NCBI GenBank assembly: GCA_001179505.1
Contig: CDMY01000929.1
Span: 124,001 to 188,000 of the forward strand
Source: Vitrella brassicaformis CCMP3155
Lineage: Eukaryota > Protista > Chromerida
Direction of reading: 5' to 3'
DNA: 64,000 bases
Part shown: positions 52,611 to 64,000 of the stretch, piece after piece
How positions within the stretch are numbered: position 1 is the first letter of the stretch
Layout of the letters: each line of letters starts with the position of its first letter
Position numbers and translations under genes: made by a program
Notes under the pieces: generated by a model
Told to the model about the DNA's origin: nothing
Database searches by the model: none
Seen by the model: only the letters and a program-made list of their open reading frames with translations

Positions 52611-53246
52611 TCAATAGACCAATACAATCAGCTTCCAATTCCGCAAGTATCTCCAAAGGTCAATGTTCTTGTTCTCCGTGGAAGTGAATCCGTCGGCTTG
52701 GCTGCCATCGACGAACAGCACACCAACCGCCTTATCGCACCCGATCAGAGCAGCATTCAGCTTGCCAATGGCTGCCACTTGACCTGTCTTTTCCACTTCG
52801 TCTGTCATGGCGCTCCAGCTCACTTTGACGCCAACCAGCTGGTGCTTCTTGTTTCTTGATGGGCGGAATGGCAGTTCCCTGCTGACAAATGACTGGACGG
52901 TCCCATTGGAGTCCACATAAGGTCGGTGGGGGTAGGCTTGGAAGAGCTGCGTCACGTTGCCCCACGCATCGGCGGCTCCCTCCATGACGATGTCGACACC
53001 CATGTCGCGGGACCTGGTGGTGCGCGTCTTGTTCTCCTTCATATAGTCGACTAGAAGCCCTATCAGCTTGATTCCCGTCTCGACCAGCTCCACTTTGTTG
53101 AGAAACTTAGAGTCCACGTTCAAATAACCCGCCTCAAGCAGCCGCTTTTCGATGGTGCTTTCCTGCTGCCCGTCAGGAGTGGTCAGGTGGCCTCGAGCCG
53201 CTGTCTGTCCCAAGGGCCTGACTGCCACATTGGCCTGCATGGACAT
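52611..53246 (-). CDS. Intronless 211-aa protein resembling the Mrr-type/PD-(D/E)XK restriction-endonuclease-like fold
   Basis: A single uninterrupted ORF in an intron-rich genome. It contains TTRSRDMGVDIV (cf. Mrr T..s.DgGiDii), LVGVKVSW (strand-x-K) and a downstream helix plus AVGVLFV strand. Confidence 0.5.
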   Translation of the reverse strand: MSMQANVAVRPLGQTAARGHLTTPDGQQESTIEKRLLEAGYLNVDSKFLNKVELVETGIKLIGLLVDYMKENKTRTTRSRDMGVDIVMEGAADAWGNVTQLFQAYPHRPYVDSNGTVQSFVSRELPFRPSRNKKHQLVGVKVSWSAMTDEVEKTGQVAAIGKLNAALIGCDKAVGVLFVDGSQADGFTSTENKNIDLWRYLRNWKLIVLVY

Positions 53247-53596
53247 CCATACAACATATACACCATAGCTTGAGGGAACAACGGCCCGTCTTGTCTCCCA
53301 GAGGCGGACGGGCTCTCGTCTCTGATGCTGGGATTACCTGTGTGGCTGTCAGTGGGACCACTGGTGGACAGAAACCACTGCCAAAGGGCGGCACGGTCAT
53401 CAGGAGCACCGAAAGAGGGACAAGCTGGAAGCTCATCTCACGACGTGAGCGATGAATGACTAGACAAAAGGATGGCAAGATCCTTCCCCAATGAGTGAGG
53501 AGTCTCCAGACGATGTCGCTGTGAGGCGAGAAAGGCAAAAACGACGGATCGCAGCTGAGCTCGCAGAGAAGATCTGATCATCAACAGCGACAGATT

Positions 53597-56794: not shown

Positions 56795-59169
56795 TCAGGC
56801 ATTTCTCGGCTGCACGGCATCGCTCCCGCGAATGTGCACGTAGATGGCATCGAACGCACGCTGCAACGAGTCCTCATCCTACCACCACACAACGCCCACA
56901 GGCCGACACAATGCTCTTCATAACAAAACCGCCCCGCTCTGCCCTGCCCTGCCCTGCCCTGCTCTGCTCACCTTGAGTCCGAACATGTGTATCTGTCCCA
57001 GCGGGTATATGAACATCTTCAGATTGGGCCTGTACATGCCGCCAGCTGTCGAGGGCGCCGCTGCGCCAGCGCCAACACCGGCAGCGGCAGCAGCAGCAGC
57101 AGCAGCTGCTGGTGCTTGTGCTGGCGGTGGTGGTGCGCTCGCCGCTGCGTCTTTGCCGCCCGCCACGGGCGCCTGGGATCGAGAGGGGCTCAACGGCCCC
57201 GCAGCCGAATCAGCCGCAGCCTGTGCGAATGCATTCATGGATACAAACCAAAGACAGATGGCTGGATGGCTGGATGCGTGTGTCTGTCTGAATGCGCACC
57301 TACCTGTGATGTGGTGGGCTTGGCATCGTCTCTACCTGCGGTGGTGGCGCTGGCGGCCATCCGCGAGTGGCGCACGAAGATGGTGTCCTCACTGATGGTG
57401 CGGACGTCGGCCGGGTTGGCGTGGGCCGGAGGACTTGTGGCGAAGTGCGTCTGCAGCACTATCGCCGGCAACACCTCGGGATCGAACTTCTGATGAAAGC
57501 ATGAGGACAAAACAGCACAGGAGACGGCGAGTGCGTCTGCTGCTGTTGCACGAGTGTGTGGTGTGGTGCACTCTGCGTACCACATCAGCGATTTCGATGA
57601 GGTCGACGGGCTCGTCATCGCGCAGACGCTTTTGGTATGTGTTGGTGAGGTAGCTGTACAGCTGCTGCAGGTGGACGCACCGCTGGCCATCCGCACTCAG
57701 ATCGACCTCAGCTGAGTGAGTGAGGGAAGCACACACGCATCAGAAGACAAGATCGATGGCAACGTTTGCCTGCGTATGTGCAGAAAGGTGTGTAGGTACC
57801 GATTAGGTGGAGGGCTTTGAGCGACGTCGTGTCGATCGGCACCTCGGGATGATACTGATCGCTGTACATCTCCTTGATATACCTGTGCACCCACACCCAC
57901 ACCCACACACACAAAAGGCGTGCAGGCTTAGTGTGTGAATGCGCTGTGTGTGTGCTAGACTTACTCCTCGTAGGCATCGACGGCGCTCTCGGGCGTCTTG
58001 GAGACAAACAGAGCCGATGCATTCTGATGGAACCACGAGGGCGTCTTGTCCCGGCCCAAACGAGCCACAACACGGTCGCCCTGCACTCATTCACATGTAC
58101 ACGTACAGTGAGTGCCACACGTCAGTCACAGCTGCGTCTGGCGGGCAGGTTAGGTGTTCGCTACCTTGGTTGATGTCTTGAAGAACGGCGCCTCGACATC
58201 CTCAAAGGGAAAGGGCCGCTCTGGGTCCACCCACGACGCGAAGTGGCCACAGATGAGATACCGCCTGATGGTCACTGCCGGGCCTTTCCTCTCCCTCTTG
58301 GCCGGGCTGCCGATGGAGACGAGACTGCCCGACCGGTCCACACGCATCCTCGGCGGCTCGCCTCCAAATGGCGGCATCATTGGGAAGGGAGGCGATGGCC
58401 ACGGCTGCGTCAAGTGGGGGTACGGGGCGGCGCCGGCAGGCATGCTGGCCATCGGACGGAATATGGGATGCATGTGGTGGGGAAAGCCCGAGGGGTAGGG
58501 GGCCTGCGGTGGGGGGCCTCGGAACTGCGCACACACAAACAGATACGTAGGAGGCTTTCGACAGTGACCGTTGGGTTGACAGTCACATCACATGCCTGCC
58601 GTACTTACCTGTTTCCTCTGCGGCGGCTGCATGCCCATCGTGCCGCCCCCAACGCCGACAGGCGACTTCTCGCGCTTGTAGGCCGACATGGCCGGAGGAG
58701 CAAATTGCCGCCCACCAGCGCCTGCAGGACCACCACCTCCAGCAGCTGCAGCAGCTGCAGCTGCAGCTGCAGCTGCAGCGGCTGAAGGGAACGGTGCTCC
58801 GGTGGAGAAGACGTTCCTACCGCCGCCGCCGGCATAGTGCTGCATCCCAGGGCCCCCTCCCTGCCAGTTTTGCAGGTTGACCGATGGGAAGGGCTGCACC
58901 CGTGCCTGTGGGTGCTGCTGCAGCCGTGGTTGCGGCTGTGTTGGCTGGCGGCCCGCCAAAGCGTTCCCCAGCGACGTCATCGGAGCTTGTGGTGGACGTG
59001 GCTGGTTGCCGCCCTGCTCGCTGGCAGCGTCTACATCCACATCGATGACGTCGGCTTCCATGGGCGGCTGGCGTGACGCGGGTGGGCCGACTGCTGAAGC
59101 AGGAGGCCTCCCGTGGAACGTGTGGCGCGAACTCATGGGCACCTCCTTCCCACTACCGCCGCTCATCAT
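56795..59169 (-). CDS. Highly divergent TATA-binding-protein-like factor (TBP/TRF/TLF fold), 589 aa, 8 exons
   Basis: Exons are 59169-58609, 58524-58165, 58080-57965, 57882-57800, 57711-57581, 57489-57304, 57220-56972 and 56878-56795, all in phase. VVARLGRDKTPSWFHQNASALFVSKTPESAVDAYEEY aligns to TBP repeat 1. KFDPEVLPAIV and RPNLKMFIYPLGQIHMFGLKDEDSLQRAFDAIY align to repeat 2. Confidence 0.7.
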
Positions 59170-59419
59170 CCTGAGGAAGCAACAGCGACAGATCTGCCTC
59201 TTTTCCCTTCAGCTCGCAAGCTAGGGTTCGTCGAGAAACCGCTCGTCGCAAGGGTGGTGTCTTGTTCAGGATCCAGAAGGCTCAAGATAGACTTCGCTTG
59301 TCGATAAGCAGAGACTTTTCGAGGCTTGTTTCGTCAAGCGACTGTTGGTCTCTTGTCGAGTTGAGTGCCAGCAGGAGAGCCTTTTCTCTGTCGTCATAGT
59401 CTTTGTATCAGCGTATAAG

Positions 59420-60634
59420 ATGCCCGTTGCTGGAACCAGCGCCATCCTCTCGTCGCATGTCGCCCTGGGGCGGCTACAGGAGGCGTGGAAGCGCATGGAC
59501 GACTCCCACCTGCGCGTGGACGCCATCTTTGGCCGCCCCTCCATCCAGCGCGCCAACTACACCGCCATGCTCACCAGCATCGCAGGAATGACCCCCGACA
59601 AGCAGGTAGTCCACCCCGATGGCAGATGCCCCCACACAGGAGATTTCGATTACCTGTCTGTCTGTCTGTGTGTGTCAGATGGAGGCCCTCAGCCAGCTCA
59701 AGCAGGAGGCGGCTGACGTCACCCAGACCATGGCGGGCATCGACGAGGAGTTCCGCCGGTCCAAGGACAACGGAATGCAAATAACCGTAGCTCATCTCAG
59801 TGGTACGCGGCCAACACACACCGAGCCACCGGTGCACTCCCACAACGACAACTGCAACGTCCCTCTCGATGATCCGCACCTCCATATCGCTGGCTGGTAT
59901 CTGCGTGTGTCAGGGAAGCGTTCGGTTCTGGATGTGACTCCGTACGACACTGTTGAAGAGGTCAAGGCCAAGATTCAGGACAGGGAGGGCATCCCGCCGG
60001 ACCAGCAGCGGCTCATCTTTGCTGGGAAGCAACTGGAGGACGGGCGCCTCCTCGCCGACTACAACATCCGACACGGGGCAACCCTCCACCTCGTGCTGCG
60101 ACTCCGCGGTAGGGACACCTGCCTGTCTGCCTGCCTTCCTGCCTGCCTCCTACACACGCAGAGGGTCTCTGATGGATTTTGTCTCTTCATTCCATCTGCT
60201 CAGGCGGTATGTTTCACATCAGCAGTGGTCGTGAGGGCTGGGGTTCGGCCGAGATGACCGATGGGGAGCGCCAGAGGCAGGAGCAGCGGGTGGCCATGGC
60301 CAAAGAGCGGCTCGCCGACCTGGGCATCGACAACACGGGCATCGAGAACGACGAAGAGCTCATCGACGAGGCCATCTTCAATGACCACGAGCTCGAGGCT
60401 GCCAAGGGCTGCAAGGAGGACGGCTACGGACAGGCCCTCGTCGATGCCTGGAGCAACAACGAGGAGGTGAGCCAGACGACACACACACACACACACTCAC
60501 ACACAGGGGGTCGTGAATGTGTGCGTGTGCTTCGTTGTCATGGCCAGGTGCTAGAGATGGTTCGTGAGCTGACGGCGGCGTTCGAGACGATGAGCGCCAC
60601 GAGCGACCGTCTGGTGCAGCGGCTCTCCATCTAA
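59420..60634 (+). CDS. Protein with an internal ubiquitin domain (57/76 identical to ubiquitin, intact LRLRGG) flanked by N- and C-terminal extensions
   Basis: Five exons. The spliced peptide reads [86 protein letters not shown]. Confidence 0.9.
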
Positions 60635-61379: not shown

Positions 61380-62516
61380 CTCACCACGAACACCCTCCCC
61401 CTCTCGATAACGTCACGCTCGAGACCGAATCGCTGCAGCGGACGGCGGGCAGCACCAATCGAGTTAGGGGTCAGTGAGTGGATGAGACGCATCGGCAGGA
61501 GATGGCTCGGTCGTCCACAAATCGATGATACCATCTCACGTACCATCTCTCGCCCACAGATGGGGAGAGGTGGTCTCGTTGGGCTGGAAGCCGTTCAGAA
61601 TCACAAAACGATCATACCTCGTATCAAAGGCAGCATTCAGATCGCCATGATCGTAGCGGTAGTCGACAGCAATGCCCTGATCCTCTGTGATGTCGTCGGT
61701 TGTCAGCAAACGGCCATAGCGCGGGTCGCCACGGCCGATATGTGCAACGAGCACCAGCTTGCCCACCTCCTCTCCCTGCCACCGGTGGAGCACCCTCTCC
61801 ATCACGAACGCCGAGAAAGAGCGACAAAGATAGGGGCCCTGTCGGATGACAGGATCGGTCCGCTTGTAGTCCTCAGCATAGCGATGGCCGCCCGGCAGCT
61901 CACCCAACGGCACCACACGAAATGACTCATCATCGACCTGATACTGTCCGTCGTCGGTTTGCTGCAGCTCCAAGCTGCCTTTCGTCCATTTCCTTGTGAG
62001 CTGACAGCCAATGGTGGCGTATATGGCCATGGCGAGTGGCAGCTGGTGGAAGACCGTTGCTGTGGGCAGTGAGTCGGCCGACAGACGGAGGGGCCGGCCC
62101 GTGCTGGGGGTCAGCCGGTAGATGAAGGCCAGTCGAACGAACCGCCCCATCGCCCGCCACTCCTCACCGATGCCCTGCTCCAACAGCCAGACGACCCTCA
62201 AGCTGCCCTCCACGTCACCATCAATGTCGAAGGCCAAGACGTCCTCCAAGCCGAGACGCCTGATGGCCTTGTTGATGTGCTGCTGGACGGCGTTGAGCAG
62301 GGTGCTGTTGACGGTCTCTGTAGTGTGGCCCAGCAGCTCCTGTTGCCGAGTGCGGGTGACGATCTGTGAGCGGAGAGCGGCTCGTTTGGCAGCGTCAGTC
62401 GACATGGCCATGGCAGCCATCTTGCTGATGGGCAATGACAGGTCAAAGAGGTCGGCGGGCTGGAAGAGGGCAGGGCTGGGGGGACGGGACGAGGGCGCTG
62501 CACCAGTGGGCTGCAT
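61380..62516 (-). pseudogene. Intronless member of what appears to be a Vitrella-type lineage-expanded family; 326-aa ORF with a degraded C-terminus
   Basis: The ORF 62516-61536 reads MQPTGAAPSSRPPSP...FRVVPLGELP..HRYA..YKRTDP. Its stop is created by a 12-bp duplication. Coding-like sequence continues in frame (DGIIDLWTTEP) and then in another frame (LQRFGLERDVIERGRV). The family assignment is from recall, not from a search. Confidence 0.55.
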
Positions 62517-62649
62517 CGGTCCGATTCGGTCGTGACTGCTGTGGAAAGGTCCCAGGGAGGCGTGATGTGCGTGAGAAATCTGCAGGCACACAGCAGTCTG
62601 CGAGCTTGGCAGAGGGAAACGAGAGTGAGTAGGCGGCAGCATGGTGAGG

Positions 62650-64000
62650 CTATACGACGGCATCGACGACAGCCAGGTGGGCGATACACTGACGTATTGA
62701 TTGCACGGCTGTCGTAGATGCATTGATTGCATTTGGCTGTGCCGTTGGCCATGCAGCTCACGACAGAGCAAATCAGGTGGGCGAAAAATGGCCGCATGAT
62801 GCGTCCGTACAGTTCACGTGGCTGCAATTTGTCTTTTTGGCTGCCCAGGGCGTGTCTGGCGGAGGAGGAGAGGCGCATCGAAATCCTGCAGCGATACCTC
62901 ATCAACGAGTGAGCAACACGACCGCACACAGACACGCGGAGATGCACTCATCGATGTGAATGCGTGTGTGTGTGTGTGTGTGTGTGTGTGCATGTCAGGG
63001 GTGTGTGTCATCCCAGTGAGTTCCCTTTGGTGCCTCCCGTCCACGAGCAGGAGTGGCAGCGACAACAGCTGGAGCGTCAGCAAGAGCAGCAGCAGATAGA
63101 GTCTGCCACAGCAGCGGATTACGCATACCAATACAATGACCGAGGTGAGTGTTGTGTAATTCACCAATCGAGAGAGCGCATCCCACTCATCCACCCGTCT
63201 GTGACCTTTGTGTGTGCACAGGTGAGAGCCCTCAGCGCAGTGGCGGCTTTGGCAACTTCGGCAACAGCGATGAAGGCAGCCCCACCAGCAGATCTGGATA
63301 CAGAGGACAGCGATTCGGTAAACCACCACACGCACACAACGACACCCCTTCCCCCCCCCACACACGTGAATGATGTTTGTTTCCGTCTGATGGGACACGT
63401 GGATGCAGGCCCGTCTCCCGAGCCGTACACCAAAGACACCAGCAGTGTGGATGGGGCCAAGAAGGAGGTGCCCCTGACGCCGCCCACCCAGTCCACCAGC
63501 ATGGGCTCGCCACCGGAGAGACCGGTCTGGCCGCACCAGGGCAGCCATGACTACGTGGTTGGGCCGCCTGTTCGCCAGGTGTCTGAGAAACAGGTAAATT
63601 AGTACCTGACCTGACAGTGTGTGTATCCACCAGAATTCACTTGCACACGTGTCACTGACACGTGCAATTGCGTAGGGCGAAGAGATACTGGCTTCGTTCG
63701 CTGGCGGTGTTGAAAGCTGCGATGACGTACGGCAGACAGACAGACAGACAGACAGGGATATGCACTTATGTGTGTGCGTGTGTGCGTCTGTGTGCGTCTG
63801 TGTGTGTGTGTGTTGATGGGATGCGTCGTCAGTTCTTCAAGCAGTTCATGGGCGTGACCACCATGTCATCTCAGGTATGAGACTCCACCCACCCACATAC
63901 ACACATGACATGAAGCAATCCAATCCGGGTGAGCACACGTGTCGTGTGTCTATGAATATGTGTGTTGGTGCCTGTGTGTGTACCGACCGTACAGGCCGAC
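62650..64000 (+). CDS. 3'-partial hypothetical multi-exon protein (Gln/Pro/Ser-rich); start unresolved
   Basis: Phase-consistent exons RACLAEEERRIEILQRYLIN, EFPLVPPVHEQEWQRQQ, GESPQRSGGFGNFG, GPSPEPYTKD and FFKQFMGVTTMSSQ. The gene runs off the window end. Confidence 0.5.

What the first reader, a model, noticed from the sequence alone, without database searches (positions are those of the whole stretch)
56795..59169. Cryptic TBP-like factor that has lost all four TATA-intercalating phenylalanines and gained a ~110-aa insert
The 8 exons splice in phase to 589 aa. The C-terminal part aligns by eye to both TBP repeats: VVARLGRDKTPSWFHQNASALFVSKTPESAVDAYEEY vs [45 protein letters not shown] vs NMVGSCDV; KFDPEVLPAIV vs SYEPELFPGLI; and PNLKMFIYPLGQIHMFGLKDEDSLQRAFDAIY vs PKIVLLIFVSGKVVLTGAK.R.EIY.AFE.IY. 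Positions equivalent to yeast F99/F116/F190/F207 read approximately G or D/H/L/Y, and the two central Asn are also replaced. An Ala/Pro-rich insert of about 110 aa splits the second repeat, and a Pro/Gly/Gln/Ala-rich region of about 260 aa precedes the core. Established: these Phe residues kink TATA DNA, and the dinoflagellate Crypthecodinium TBP-like factor has them replaced and prefers a TTTT element. Inference: an undescribed, TATA-independent TBP paralogue that may define an alternative core-promoter system or a non-DNA-binding regulator in myzozoans.
Basis: partly seen in the sequence, partly recalled or inferred. Interest (0 to 1): 0.82.

Follow-up and report, generated by a model that had tools for sequence, protein, structure and literature searches.

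The report
Very divergent TBP-like gene in Vitrella
This is a real, expressed, already annotated but unnamed gene of the alga Vitrella brassicaformis whose C-terminal half is most likely an extremely divergent copy of the TATA-binding protein fold that has lost TBP's DNA-gripping residues; its function and its spread beyond Vitrella are unknown.

Summary
The 8-exon minus-strand gene (56795-59169, 589 aa) is real. Spliced transcript contigs from two studies and an MMETSP transcript confirm all seven introns. The gene is not hidden: GCA_001179505.1 annotates it as an unnamed 588-aa product with no Pfam hit on record.

The TBP reading is supported, but only moderately.
- Pfam TBP is a top hit yet below threshold (E 0.04-0.27; 11.5-14.1 bits against a cut-off of 22.9).
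- My own TBP profiles give E 5e-5 for the intact protein and 9e-8 with the insert removed. No shuffle reached either score.
- A protein-language-model search puts both the whole core and the N-terminal lobe alone next to TBP clusters.

In that alignment the six DNA-contact positions, kept in 54-57 of 57 TBPs, read R, G, H, H, L, Y. One Phe may survive if the register shifts by one residue. A ~105-110-aa Ala-rich insert splits lobe 2. The core is acidic (pI 5.9), whereas eukaryotic TBP cores are 9.3-10.1.

Sequence evidence for lobe 1 alone is weak (P about 0.04). No unbiased fold model was obtained. No orthologue was found, but those searches were limited. Whether Vitrella has a canonical TBP could not be tested.

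The scan noted this same stretch once before (s1-227027).

The parts
56795..59169 (-). Whole coding gene. It has 8 exons and 7 GT-AG introns of 82-93 nt, and encodes 589 aa from the first ATG (588 aa as annotated, from the second ATG at 59166). In the public record it lies at CDMY01000929.1:180795-183166.
58306..59169 (-). N-terminal low-complexity region, residues 1-260 (exon 1 and the first 73 codons of exon 2, with intron 1 inside). It is rich in Pro, Gly, Ala and Gln and includes a poly-Ala run. A basic KRERK patch follows it, just before the core.
   Evidence: Composition; no Pfam hit
57825..58275 (-). Putative TBP lobe 1, residues about 271-365 (end of exon 2, exon 3, most of exon 4). 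S1 and S3-S5-H2 can be aligned. The H1/S2 stretch is Pro-rich and poorly modelled.
   Evidence: MAFFT and hhalign register. hhalign on this lobe alone gives P 0.041, with 7 of 200 shuffles reaching it. hmmsearch finds nothing. The ESM Atlas feature search on this part alone gives 22 of 30 hits in TBP clusters.
57451..57824 (-). Putative TBP lobe 2, first part, residues about 366-430 (end of exon 4, exon 5, start of exon 6). It holds S1' (LHLIAEVDL), an H1' about 20 aa longer than in TBP, and the stirrup-like motif KFDPEVLPAIVLQ.
57038..57450 (-). Ala/Pro/Ser-rich insert, residues 431-540 (3' part of exon 6, intron 6, 5' part of exon 7). It lies in the hairpin between the strands aligned to S3' and S4'. 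It is predicted disordered apart from a poly-Ala helix and carries no TBP signal of its own.
56798..57037 (-). Putative TBP lobe 2, second part, residues 541-589 (end of exon 7, intron 7, exon 8). It corresponds to S4'-S5'-H2' and includes AFDAIY, which matches the eukaryotic repeat-2 motif AFExIY. This is the statistically strongest TBP-like piece.
   Evidence: Pfam TBP profile positions 45-81 of 85; yeast TBP chains 135-172; my own profiles

Best explanation
The locus is an expressed nuclear gene of Vitrella brassicaformis, annotated but unnamed. Its product has a ~260-aa Pro/Gly/Ala/Gln-rich low-complexity N-terminus followed by an extremely divergent two-lobed TBP-fold domain.

Shown here:
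- The gene is transcribed and spliced as modelled.
- The core is collinear with both TBP repeats.
- The positions that in TBP intercalate into and hydrogen-bond the TATA minor groove (four Phe, two Asn) are replaced. One Phe is possibly retained.
- A ~105-110-aa disordered Ala-rich insert sits in the S3'-S4' hairpin of lobe 2.
- The core is acidic, unlike eukaryotic TBP cores.
- The C-terminal stirrup motif is conservatively kept (FDPEVLPA against YEPELFPG).

Inferred: the protein descends from a duplicated eukaryotic TBP. The best match is to the eukaryote-specific end of repeat 2. It no longer recognises a TATA box by the canonical kinking mechanism. It most likely works as a TLF-type accessory or alternative initiation factor. 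On this view the saddle serves mainly as a protein-docking platform, with the retained stirrup binding a TFIIB/BRF-like partner and the low-complexity regions binding other factors. It may or may not keep some non-TATA DNA contact.

My confidence is about 0.8 in the fold and descent, and about 0.3 in the functional part.
For: Gene and expression.

Profile matches:
- Pfam TBP is the first or second best family in a scan of all 24,736 Pfam models, at E 0.043-0.27.
- Yeast TBP chains are among the four PDB sequences listed, over the same region, at E 1.8.
- The archaeal TBP profile gives 6.1 bits, E 3.6e-4, for the intact protein and 14.0 bits, E 1.3e-6, with the insert removed.
- The eukaryotic TBP profile gives 9.0 bits, E 4.6e-5, and 17.9 bits, E 8.6e-8, for the same two forms. 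The match falls on repeat-2 positions 129-179.
- No scored shuffle (955 and 454 of the 2000 per set) reaches these scores.
- hhalign against a euk+archaeal+viral TBP alignment gives probability 78%. One local alignment of 137 columns spans S3 of lobe 1 to H2', and 0 of 300 shuffles reach it.

Independent lines:
- ESM Atlas language-model features: 28 of 30 nearest clusters are TBP, best 0.92 with 185 of 256 shared features. For lobe 1 alone, 22 of 30 are TBP, best 0.93 with 173 shared.
- Even the low-confidence single-sequence model has secondary-structure elements in the TBP order.

Signature residues and charge.
Against: - Every sequence score is below curated thresholds. Pfam gives 11.5-14.1 bits against a cut-off of 22.9, and the precomputed Pfam field is empty.
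- At proteome scale the intact-protein E-value would be about 1.
- The strongest scores need the insert removed, and that removal was guided by the hypothesis.
- Lobe 1 alone is not detected by HMMER and is marginal in hhalign (P 0.041).
- One hhalign shuffle reached 33.6 against the observed 38.5.
- The only confident 3D model was built on a TBP alignment, so its TBP match (TM 0.70-0.73 by target) is circular.
- Without an alignment, pLDDT was 36.
- No orthologue was found that would show purifying selection.
- Nothing here bears on function.
Confidence: 0.7

Rival explanations
1. Only the C-terminal piece descends from TBP. The stirrup motif plus S4'-S5'-H2' (about 60 residues) would be a TBP remnant, while the N-terminal 'lobe 1' is unrelated or has decayed beyond the fold. 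The protein would then not be a saddle. It would be a relic of a partial duplication, or a decaying duplicate that is still transcribed.
For: All HMMER signal lies in residues 414-430 and 541-582. Lobe 1 alone gives E 0.18-0.22 in hmmsearch and P 0.041 in hhalign. Its H1/S2 stretch is Pro-rich and poorly modelled even with a TBP alignment (pLDDT 50-62). No orthologues were found.
Against: - The best lobe-1 hhalign alignment falls at exactly the homologous repeat-1 position.
- The whole-core local alignment runs through both lobes.
- The language-model search on lobe 1 alone still lands on TBP clusters.
- The reading frame is intact over 8 exons, and the transcript is seen in three independent data sets.
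Confidence: 0.13
2. The resemblance to TBP is chance. The core is an unrelated alpha/beta domain of a lineage-specific orphan protein.
For: The scores are sub-threshold everywhere. The finding was picked by eye from a whole genome, so the single-comparison E-values overstate significance. Identity to TBPs is 12-21%. The Atlas tool warns that shuffled proteins reach 0.9 in 4-10% of cases and that a third of them get ten concordant hits.
Against: Three different methods converge on the same one family out of about 25,000. The two matching pieces are in the right order and match the right repeat. No shuffle reaches the scores. The shared-feature counts of 185 and 173 lie in the range that the tool reports for true family members.
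Confidence: 0.12
3. It is the organism's main or only TBP-type factor. Like the dinoflagellate TLF, it would replace canonical TBP and bind a non-TATA element.
For: The dinoflagellate TLF lacks the four Phe and prefers TTTT (PMC5029490, citing Guillebault et al. 2002). The scan's notes on this genome record no canonical TBP, though that is only an absence of notes.
Against: - The dinoflagellate TLF is described as clearly homologous to TBP, whereas this protein is far below the Pfam threshold.
- The core is acidic and the Asn pair is also lost.
- Apicomplexans, sister to chromerids, have ordinary TBPs (PMC5029490 Fig. 4 legend; PMC1199594).
- An essential general factor would be expected to have detectable orthologues, and none was seen.
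Confidence: 0.05

Closest known systems
Canonical TATA-binding protein (TBP, Pfam PF00352), eukaryotic and archaeal
   Same: The order of both repeats is collinear. The stirrup motif (F-D-P-E-V-L-P-A against Y-E-P-E-L-F-P-G) and the S4'-S5'-H2' block ending in AF(D/E)xIY are shared. So are a conserved Arg at the yeast R105 position and Pro at the P191 position.
   Different: - Identity is only 12-21%.
- It scores below the Pfam threshold.
- Both central Asn and three or four of the four intercalating Phe are replaced.
- T215 is replaced by Phe, and the T124 position falls in a gap.
- The core pI is 5.9, against 9.3-10.1 in 72 eukaryotic TBP cores.
- It has a 105-110-aa insert in the S3'-S4' hairpin and an H1' about 20 aa longer.
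- It carries a 260-aa low-complexity N-terminus.
Dinoflagellate TBP-like factor (TLF of Crypthecodinium cohnii; Guillebault et al. 2002, as summarised in PMC5029490 and PMC11453091)
   Same: It is a myzozoan TBP-family protein in which the four TATA-contacting Phe are replaced.
   Different: TLF is described as clearly homologous to TBP. It is taken to be the lineage's replacement for TBP, and it binds DNA (TTTT). The Vitrella protein is far more divergent, is acidic, carries a large insert, and has no binding data. I had no TLF sequence in hand, so no direct comparison or tree was made.
Metazoan TBP paralogues TBPL1 (TRF2/TLF) and TBPL2 (PMC7221094)
   Same: They are duplicated TBP-fold factors thought to act at specialised promoters. 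Some differ in their N-terminal low-complexity additions.
   Different: According to PMC7221094, these paralogues mostly keep the signature positions. The notable change is one Phe to Trp in TBPL1, and TBPL1 has no N-terminal extension. Here nearly all DNA-contact signatures are changed.
Divergent TBP-like proteins of giant viruses (Nucleocytoviricota)
   Same: They are the nearest clusters in the language-model search, especially for lobe 1. In those clusters only 10-31% of members reach Pfam TBP, so the degree of divergence is similar.
   Different: No sequence relative of the Vitrella core was found in IMG/VR. The 14 viral TBP-likes I fetched keep the Phe and Asn signatures almost throughout. 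The Vitrella gene has seven spliceosomal introns.

Membership tests
TBP family (Pfam PF00352) | Profile match at or above the Pfam gathering score (22.9 bits) | tested here: not met
   The match is 11.5-14.1 bits, E 0.043-0.27, over one stretch only (profile positions 45-81 of 85). The precomputed Pfam field of the annotated 588-aa product is empty.
TBP family (Pfam PF00352) | Two tandem repeats in the order S1-H1-S2-S3-S4-S5-H2, forming a saddle | tested here: inconclusive
   MAFFT and hhalign give collinear alignments of both lobes, and the language-model search hits TBP for each part. However, lobe 1 alone is marginal, the unbiased model has pLDDT 36, and the confident model is alignment-driven.
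TBP family (Pfam PF00352) | Four intercalating Phe (yeast F99, F116, F190, F207) | tested here: not met
   They read G, H (or F with a one-residue shift), L and Y. Of 57 reference TBPs, 54-57 have F.
TBP family (Pfam PF00352) | Central Asn pair on S1 and S1' (yeast N69, N159) | tested here: not met
   They read R and H. Of 57 reference TBPs, 54 and 57 have N.
TBP family (Pfam PF00352) | C-terminal stirrup motif YEPE(L/Q)FPG. I recall it as the TFIIB contact through E186, E188 and L189 in yeast; that is from memory and was not tested. | tested here: met
   The motif reads F-D-P-E-V-L-P-A, keeping Asp/Glu, Pro, Glu and Pro. It matches the profiles on its own at E 0.005-0.03.
TBP family (Pfam PF00352) | Sequence-specific binding and bending of TATA DNA | not testable with these tools
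   This needs EMSA, PBM or ChIP. The acidic core and the lost contact residues argue against the canonical mode.
TBP-like factors (TLF/TRF2/TBPL1; dinoflagellate TLF) | Clear TBP homology with partial or complete loss of the TATA-contacting Phe, coexisting with TBP or replacing it | tested here: inconclusive
   The loss of Phe is met. 'Clear homology' is not met. Coexistence with a canonical TBP in Vitrella could not be tested. No TLF sequences were available for a tree.

The most novel reading that the evidence does not exclude
The protein is a functional TBP-fold factor that has abandoned minor-groove TATA recognition. It would either nucleate a lineage-specific, TATA-independent initiation pathway or act as a non-DNA-binding decoy or adaptor for TFIIB/BRF-type factors. 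It would have so far undetected orthologues in chromerids, colpodellids or apicomplexans, which would make it a new class of TBP-family protein in Myzozoa.
Probability: 0.12. Interest if true: 0.8.

Novelty: new variant of a known kind. Interest (0 to 1): 0.5.

Why it matters
TBP is among the most conserved proteins of archaea and eukaryotes, and its known paralogues mostly keep the DNA-contact signature. A transcribed TBP-fold gene in a free-living relative of apicomplexans would mark an extreme of what this fold tolerates. This one has replaced nearly all DNA-contact residues, turned acidic and taken a 110-aa insert.

If it is conserved in other myzozoans, it would give a handle on their poorly understood core-promoter machinery. 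Dinoflagellates use a TLF, and apicomplexans have few recognisable general factors.

It also shows that such genes sit in public annotations as 'unnamed protein product', because they fall below Pfam thresholds. As it stands, though, this is a single-species, function-unknown protein with moderate homology evidence.

Tried and rejected
1. A Pfam scan of the single exons found nothing, because the pieces are too short.

It returned only two spurious bacterial repeat proteins. It found no self-hit and no relatives.

3. An ESM Atlas search on that same 70-aa piece gave no usable hit.

4. I tried exact-product look-ups of neighbouring ORFs. The 211-aa Mrr-like ORF and the 294- and 398-aa starts of ORF 61536-62771 are not on record. 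The 326-aa start is on record, and it gave the public contig and its gene calls.

5. To get past the length filter of the word-based search, I used a two-row alignment (a long carrier plus exon 2) as the query.
   - With a TBP carrier, the 120 listed rows were all canonical TBPs, so that search was wasted.
   - With the neighbouring ORF as carrier, it returned P0183, the MMETSP version of the protein.

6. A search with P0183 residues 215-390 returned only P0183 itself.

7. IMG/VR holds no relative of the core.

8. Single-sequence AlphaFold gave pLDDT 36, which is unusable for a fold search.

9. AlphaFold with a TBP-family alignment, followed by Foldseek (PDB) and the Atlas shape search, returns TBP. 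I reject this as independent evidence because the alignment dictates the fold.

10. I considered whether the first part of the insert (TIFVRHSRMAAS) is a degenerate extra S4-S5 unit. The profiles give it no support (E 0.34).

11. I did not build a phylogeny. Identity is 12-21%, I had no TLF, TRF2 or apicomplexan sequences, and all my eukaryotic TBPs were selected by a canonical motif. A tree would show only a long branch.

12. The spliced 589-aa sequence has no reference of its own. I did not type it into any tool. Tests on the full N-terminus therefore used exon references or local scripts only.
Full report
**What is there.** On the minus strand of 56795-59169, eight exons with GT-AG introns of 82-93 nt splice in phase to 1770 nt, or 589 aa. 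I checked this against transcripts.
- Logan contigs of two runs from different studies (X1, X6) carry the joined form. Joints lie at exactly my introns 1, 2, 4, 5 and 6. Record arithmetic fits introns 3 and 7, where repeats made the tool skip.
- Two DNA runs (X3, X7) are collinear with the window.
- An MMETSP transcript ORF, P0183, is identical to the model over its last 455 residues (model 135-589), which covers every exon junction.
- The first 84 residues of P0183 are unrelated. They join at the poly-Ala run, most likely through a chimeric assembly.

**Identity of the genome and annotation.** The exact 326-aa product of a neighbouring ORF is on record in NCBI assembly GCA_001179505.1, contig CDMY01000929.1. 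Proteins of that ORF's family carry the source name Vitrella brassicaformis CCMP3155.
- By coordinate arithmetic the window is CDMY01000929.1:124001-188000.
- My gene is called there at window 56795-59166, with a 588-aa product. That is the same exons, starting at the second of two adjacent ATGs.
- Its precomputed Pfam field is empty.
- So the gene is not hidden. What is new is the reading of its product.

**How I obtained a usable protein reference.** The spliced protein has no reference of its own, and I did not type it. Most database tools therefore saw only exon pieces at first.
- Single exons gave nothing in Pfam.
- The one exhaustive representative search, spent on a 70-aa exon-2 piece, found no self-hit and no relative.
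- A two-row carrier alignment finally retrieved P0183.
- From then on the core could be addressed as P0183:205-539.

**Is it TBP-like? Hypothesis-free tests.**
- A scan of all Pfam models puts TBP (PF00352) first or second for the core. The scores are E 0.12 for residues 205-539 and 0.043 for the C-terminal 200 aa. That is 11.5-14.1 bits against a gathering score of 22.9, over profile positions 45-81 of 85.
- phmmer against PDB sequences lists four entries. Three are yeast TBP chains, over the same stretch, at E 1.8.
- The ESM Atlas language-model search places the core among TBP clusters: 28 of 30 hits, best 0.92, 185 of 256 shared features. The tool says that range is typical of true family members.
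- Residues 211-320 (lobe 1 only) exclude everything HMMER can see. They still land on divergent TBP-like clusters, mostly from giant viruses: 22 of 30 hits, best 0.93, 173 shared.
- I do not know whether the tool embeds the part alone or in the context of the whole protein. I therefore count that last result as moderate support.

**Is it TBP-like? Targeted tests.** I fetched 85 archaeal TBPs, about 80 eukaryotic TBP cores from metagenome and metatranscriptome contigs and 14 viral TBP-likes. From these I built profiles locally. All E-values below are for a single comparison.

| Profile | Intact protein | Insert removed |
|---|---|---|
| Archaeal TBP | 6.1 bits, E 3.6e-4 | 14.0 bits, E 1.3e-6 |
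| Eukaryotic TBP | 9.0 bits, E 4.6e-5 | 17.9 bits, E 8.6e-8 |

- With the eukaryotic profile the match falls on repeat-2 positions 129-179, including the eukaryote-typical AFExIY of H2'.
- Each set was shuffled 2000 times; none of the 955 (insert-deleted) and 454 (full-length) shuffles that returned a score came near these values (maxima 4.3 and 3.3 bits).
- hhalign of the insert-deleted core against the combined alignment gives probability 78%. One local alignment of 137 columns runs from S3 of lobe 1 to H2'.
- The reversed sequence scores 14.8. None of 300 shuffles reaches the observed 38.5, although one reached 33.6.
- Lobe 1 on its own is invisible to HMMER (E about 0.2).
- In hhalign lobe 1 is marginal (P 0.041; 7 of 200 shuffles). 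Its best alignment nevertheless lies at the homologous repeat-1 position.

**Register and signature residues.**
- In that alignment the positions of yeast N69, F99, F116, N159, F190 and F207 read R, G, H, H, L and Y. Of the 57 references, 54-57 have N or F there.
- hhalign opens a one-residue gap that puts the Phe of SWF on F116. One of the four Phe may therefore survive.
- R105 and P191 are kept.
- The stirrup motif is conservatively retained (FDPEVLPA).
- The T215 position is Phe.
- The yeast numbering and the roles of these residues are from my own knowledge of the TBP-TATA structures. The statement that dinoflagellate TLF lacks the four Phe and prefers TTTT is in PMC5029490 and PMC11453091.

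**Other anatomy.**
- The insert spans residues 431-540 and is 35% Ala. It lies between the strands aligned to S3' and S4'. That is the hairpin on the edge opposite the stirrup, not the stirrup itself.
- The insert has no TBP signal (E 0.34). It is predicted disordered except for a poly-Ala helix.
- H1' of lobe 2 is about 20 residues longer than in TBP.
- The core is acidic (pI 5.9, net charge -5). All 72 eukaryotic TBP cores I collected are basic (pI 9.3-10.1, net +9 to +21). Many archaeal and viral TBPs are acidic too, so charge alone does not exclude DNA binding.
- The N-terminal 260 residues are Pro/Gly/Ala/Gln-rich.

**Structure.**
- AlphaFold2 without an alignment gave pLDDT 36. Its secondary-structure elements nevertheless fall in the TBP order and at nearly the same residues as in the guided model.
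- With the TBP-family alignment A7, the model has pLDDT 69.7, with 95 residues above 90. Foldseek then returns TBP chains at TM 0.70-0.73 normalised by target. The Atlas shape search returns TBP clusters.
- Because the alignment consisted of TBPs, this shows compatibility, not independent proof.

**Relatives.** None was found.
- The 70-aa exhaustive search found nothing.
- The word-limited search with residues 215-390 found only the protein itself.
- IMG/VR holds no relative of the core.
- These searches are too limited to claim absence. A Chromera orthologue at 30-40% identity could have been missed by all three.
- The NCBI 588-aa product itself did not appear in either protein library, so those libraries are incomplete for this gene.
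- I could not test whether Vitrella has a canonical TBP.

**Weighing.**
- Each sequence score is modest. At proteome scale the intact-protein E-value would be near 1, and the gene was chosen by eye for this very resemblance.
- Against that, three methods of different kinds single out the same one family from about 25,000. Those methods are the curated Pfam profile, language-model features, and my own profiles with shuffles.
- The matching pieces are in the correct order and on the correct repeat. An unguided multiple alignment recovers the same register.
- I put the TBP-fold descent at about 0.8.
- I put a TLF-type, non-TATA-kinking function at about 0.3. That estimate rests only on the lost contact residues, the acidic core and the retained stirrup.

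**Verdict.**
This is probably a very divergent TBP-fold protein. It is an annotated gene rather than a cryptic one. It fails formal family membership, and it has no evidence yet for a role in core-promoter recognition or for occurrence outside Vitrella.
- Compared with known paralogues, which mostly keep the signature positions (PMC7221094), it is an extreme variant of a known kind.
- Interest is moderate. It would rise if orthologues exist in other myzozoans or if Vitrella lacks a canonical TBP.

Noticed in passing
window 61536-62771 (-): The neighbouring ORF (annotated product 326 aa, no Pfam) belongs to a large family: 80 proteins at E <= 0.001, more than 50 named Vitrella brassicaformis CCMP3155 by their source, the rest unnamed JGI, ENA or MMETSP entries. 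Many of the members sit on the same contigs. Contig lengths of 153125, 106543 and 94799 recur, which suggests tandem arrays. Two members (P0128, P0133) carry a PF03423 hit.
   Followed up: partly
window 52611-53436 (-): The ORF noted earlier as an intronless Mrr-like gene (211 aa, 52611-53246) is not on record as such. The public annotation calls a 240-aa product over 52611-53436. That span implies an extra 5' exon and one intron of about 100 nt.
   Followed up: partly
P0183 residues 1-84 (MMETSP transcript): The N-terminus of the MMETSP ORF differs from the genome-encoded protein and joins it at the poly-Ala run. It has a weak Pfam hit to Rpp20 (E 0.015). This is probably a chimeric transcript assembly across the GCN repeat.
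   Followed up: partly
window 56926-56976, 57061-57137, 57880-57919: Three simple repeats break short-read assemblies here: a CAGGG-type repeat in intron 7, the GCN poly-Ala repeat in exon 7, and a GT/GGGT repeat in intron 3. The read tool skipped them, and contigs of several runs end at them.
   Followed up: no
window 59166-59420: The gene lies head-to-head with a 284-aa ubiquitin/Rad60-SLD domain gene (annotated at window 59420-60634, + strand). Only about 250 nt separate the two start codons, so they probably share a bidirectional promoter region.
   Followed up: no
protein libraries (not a window feature): The annotated 588-aa NCBI product of this gene is indexed by position. It did not appear in the representative library or in the 90%-cluster library, where only the MMETSP version did. 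A blank in those libraries does not show that a Vitrella protein is unannotated.
   Followed up: partly
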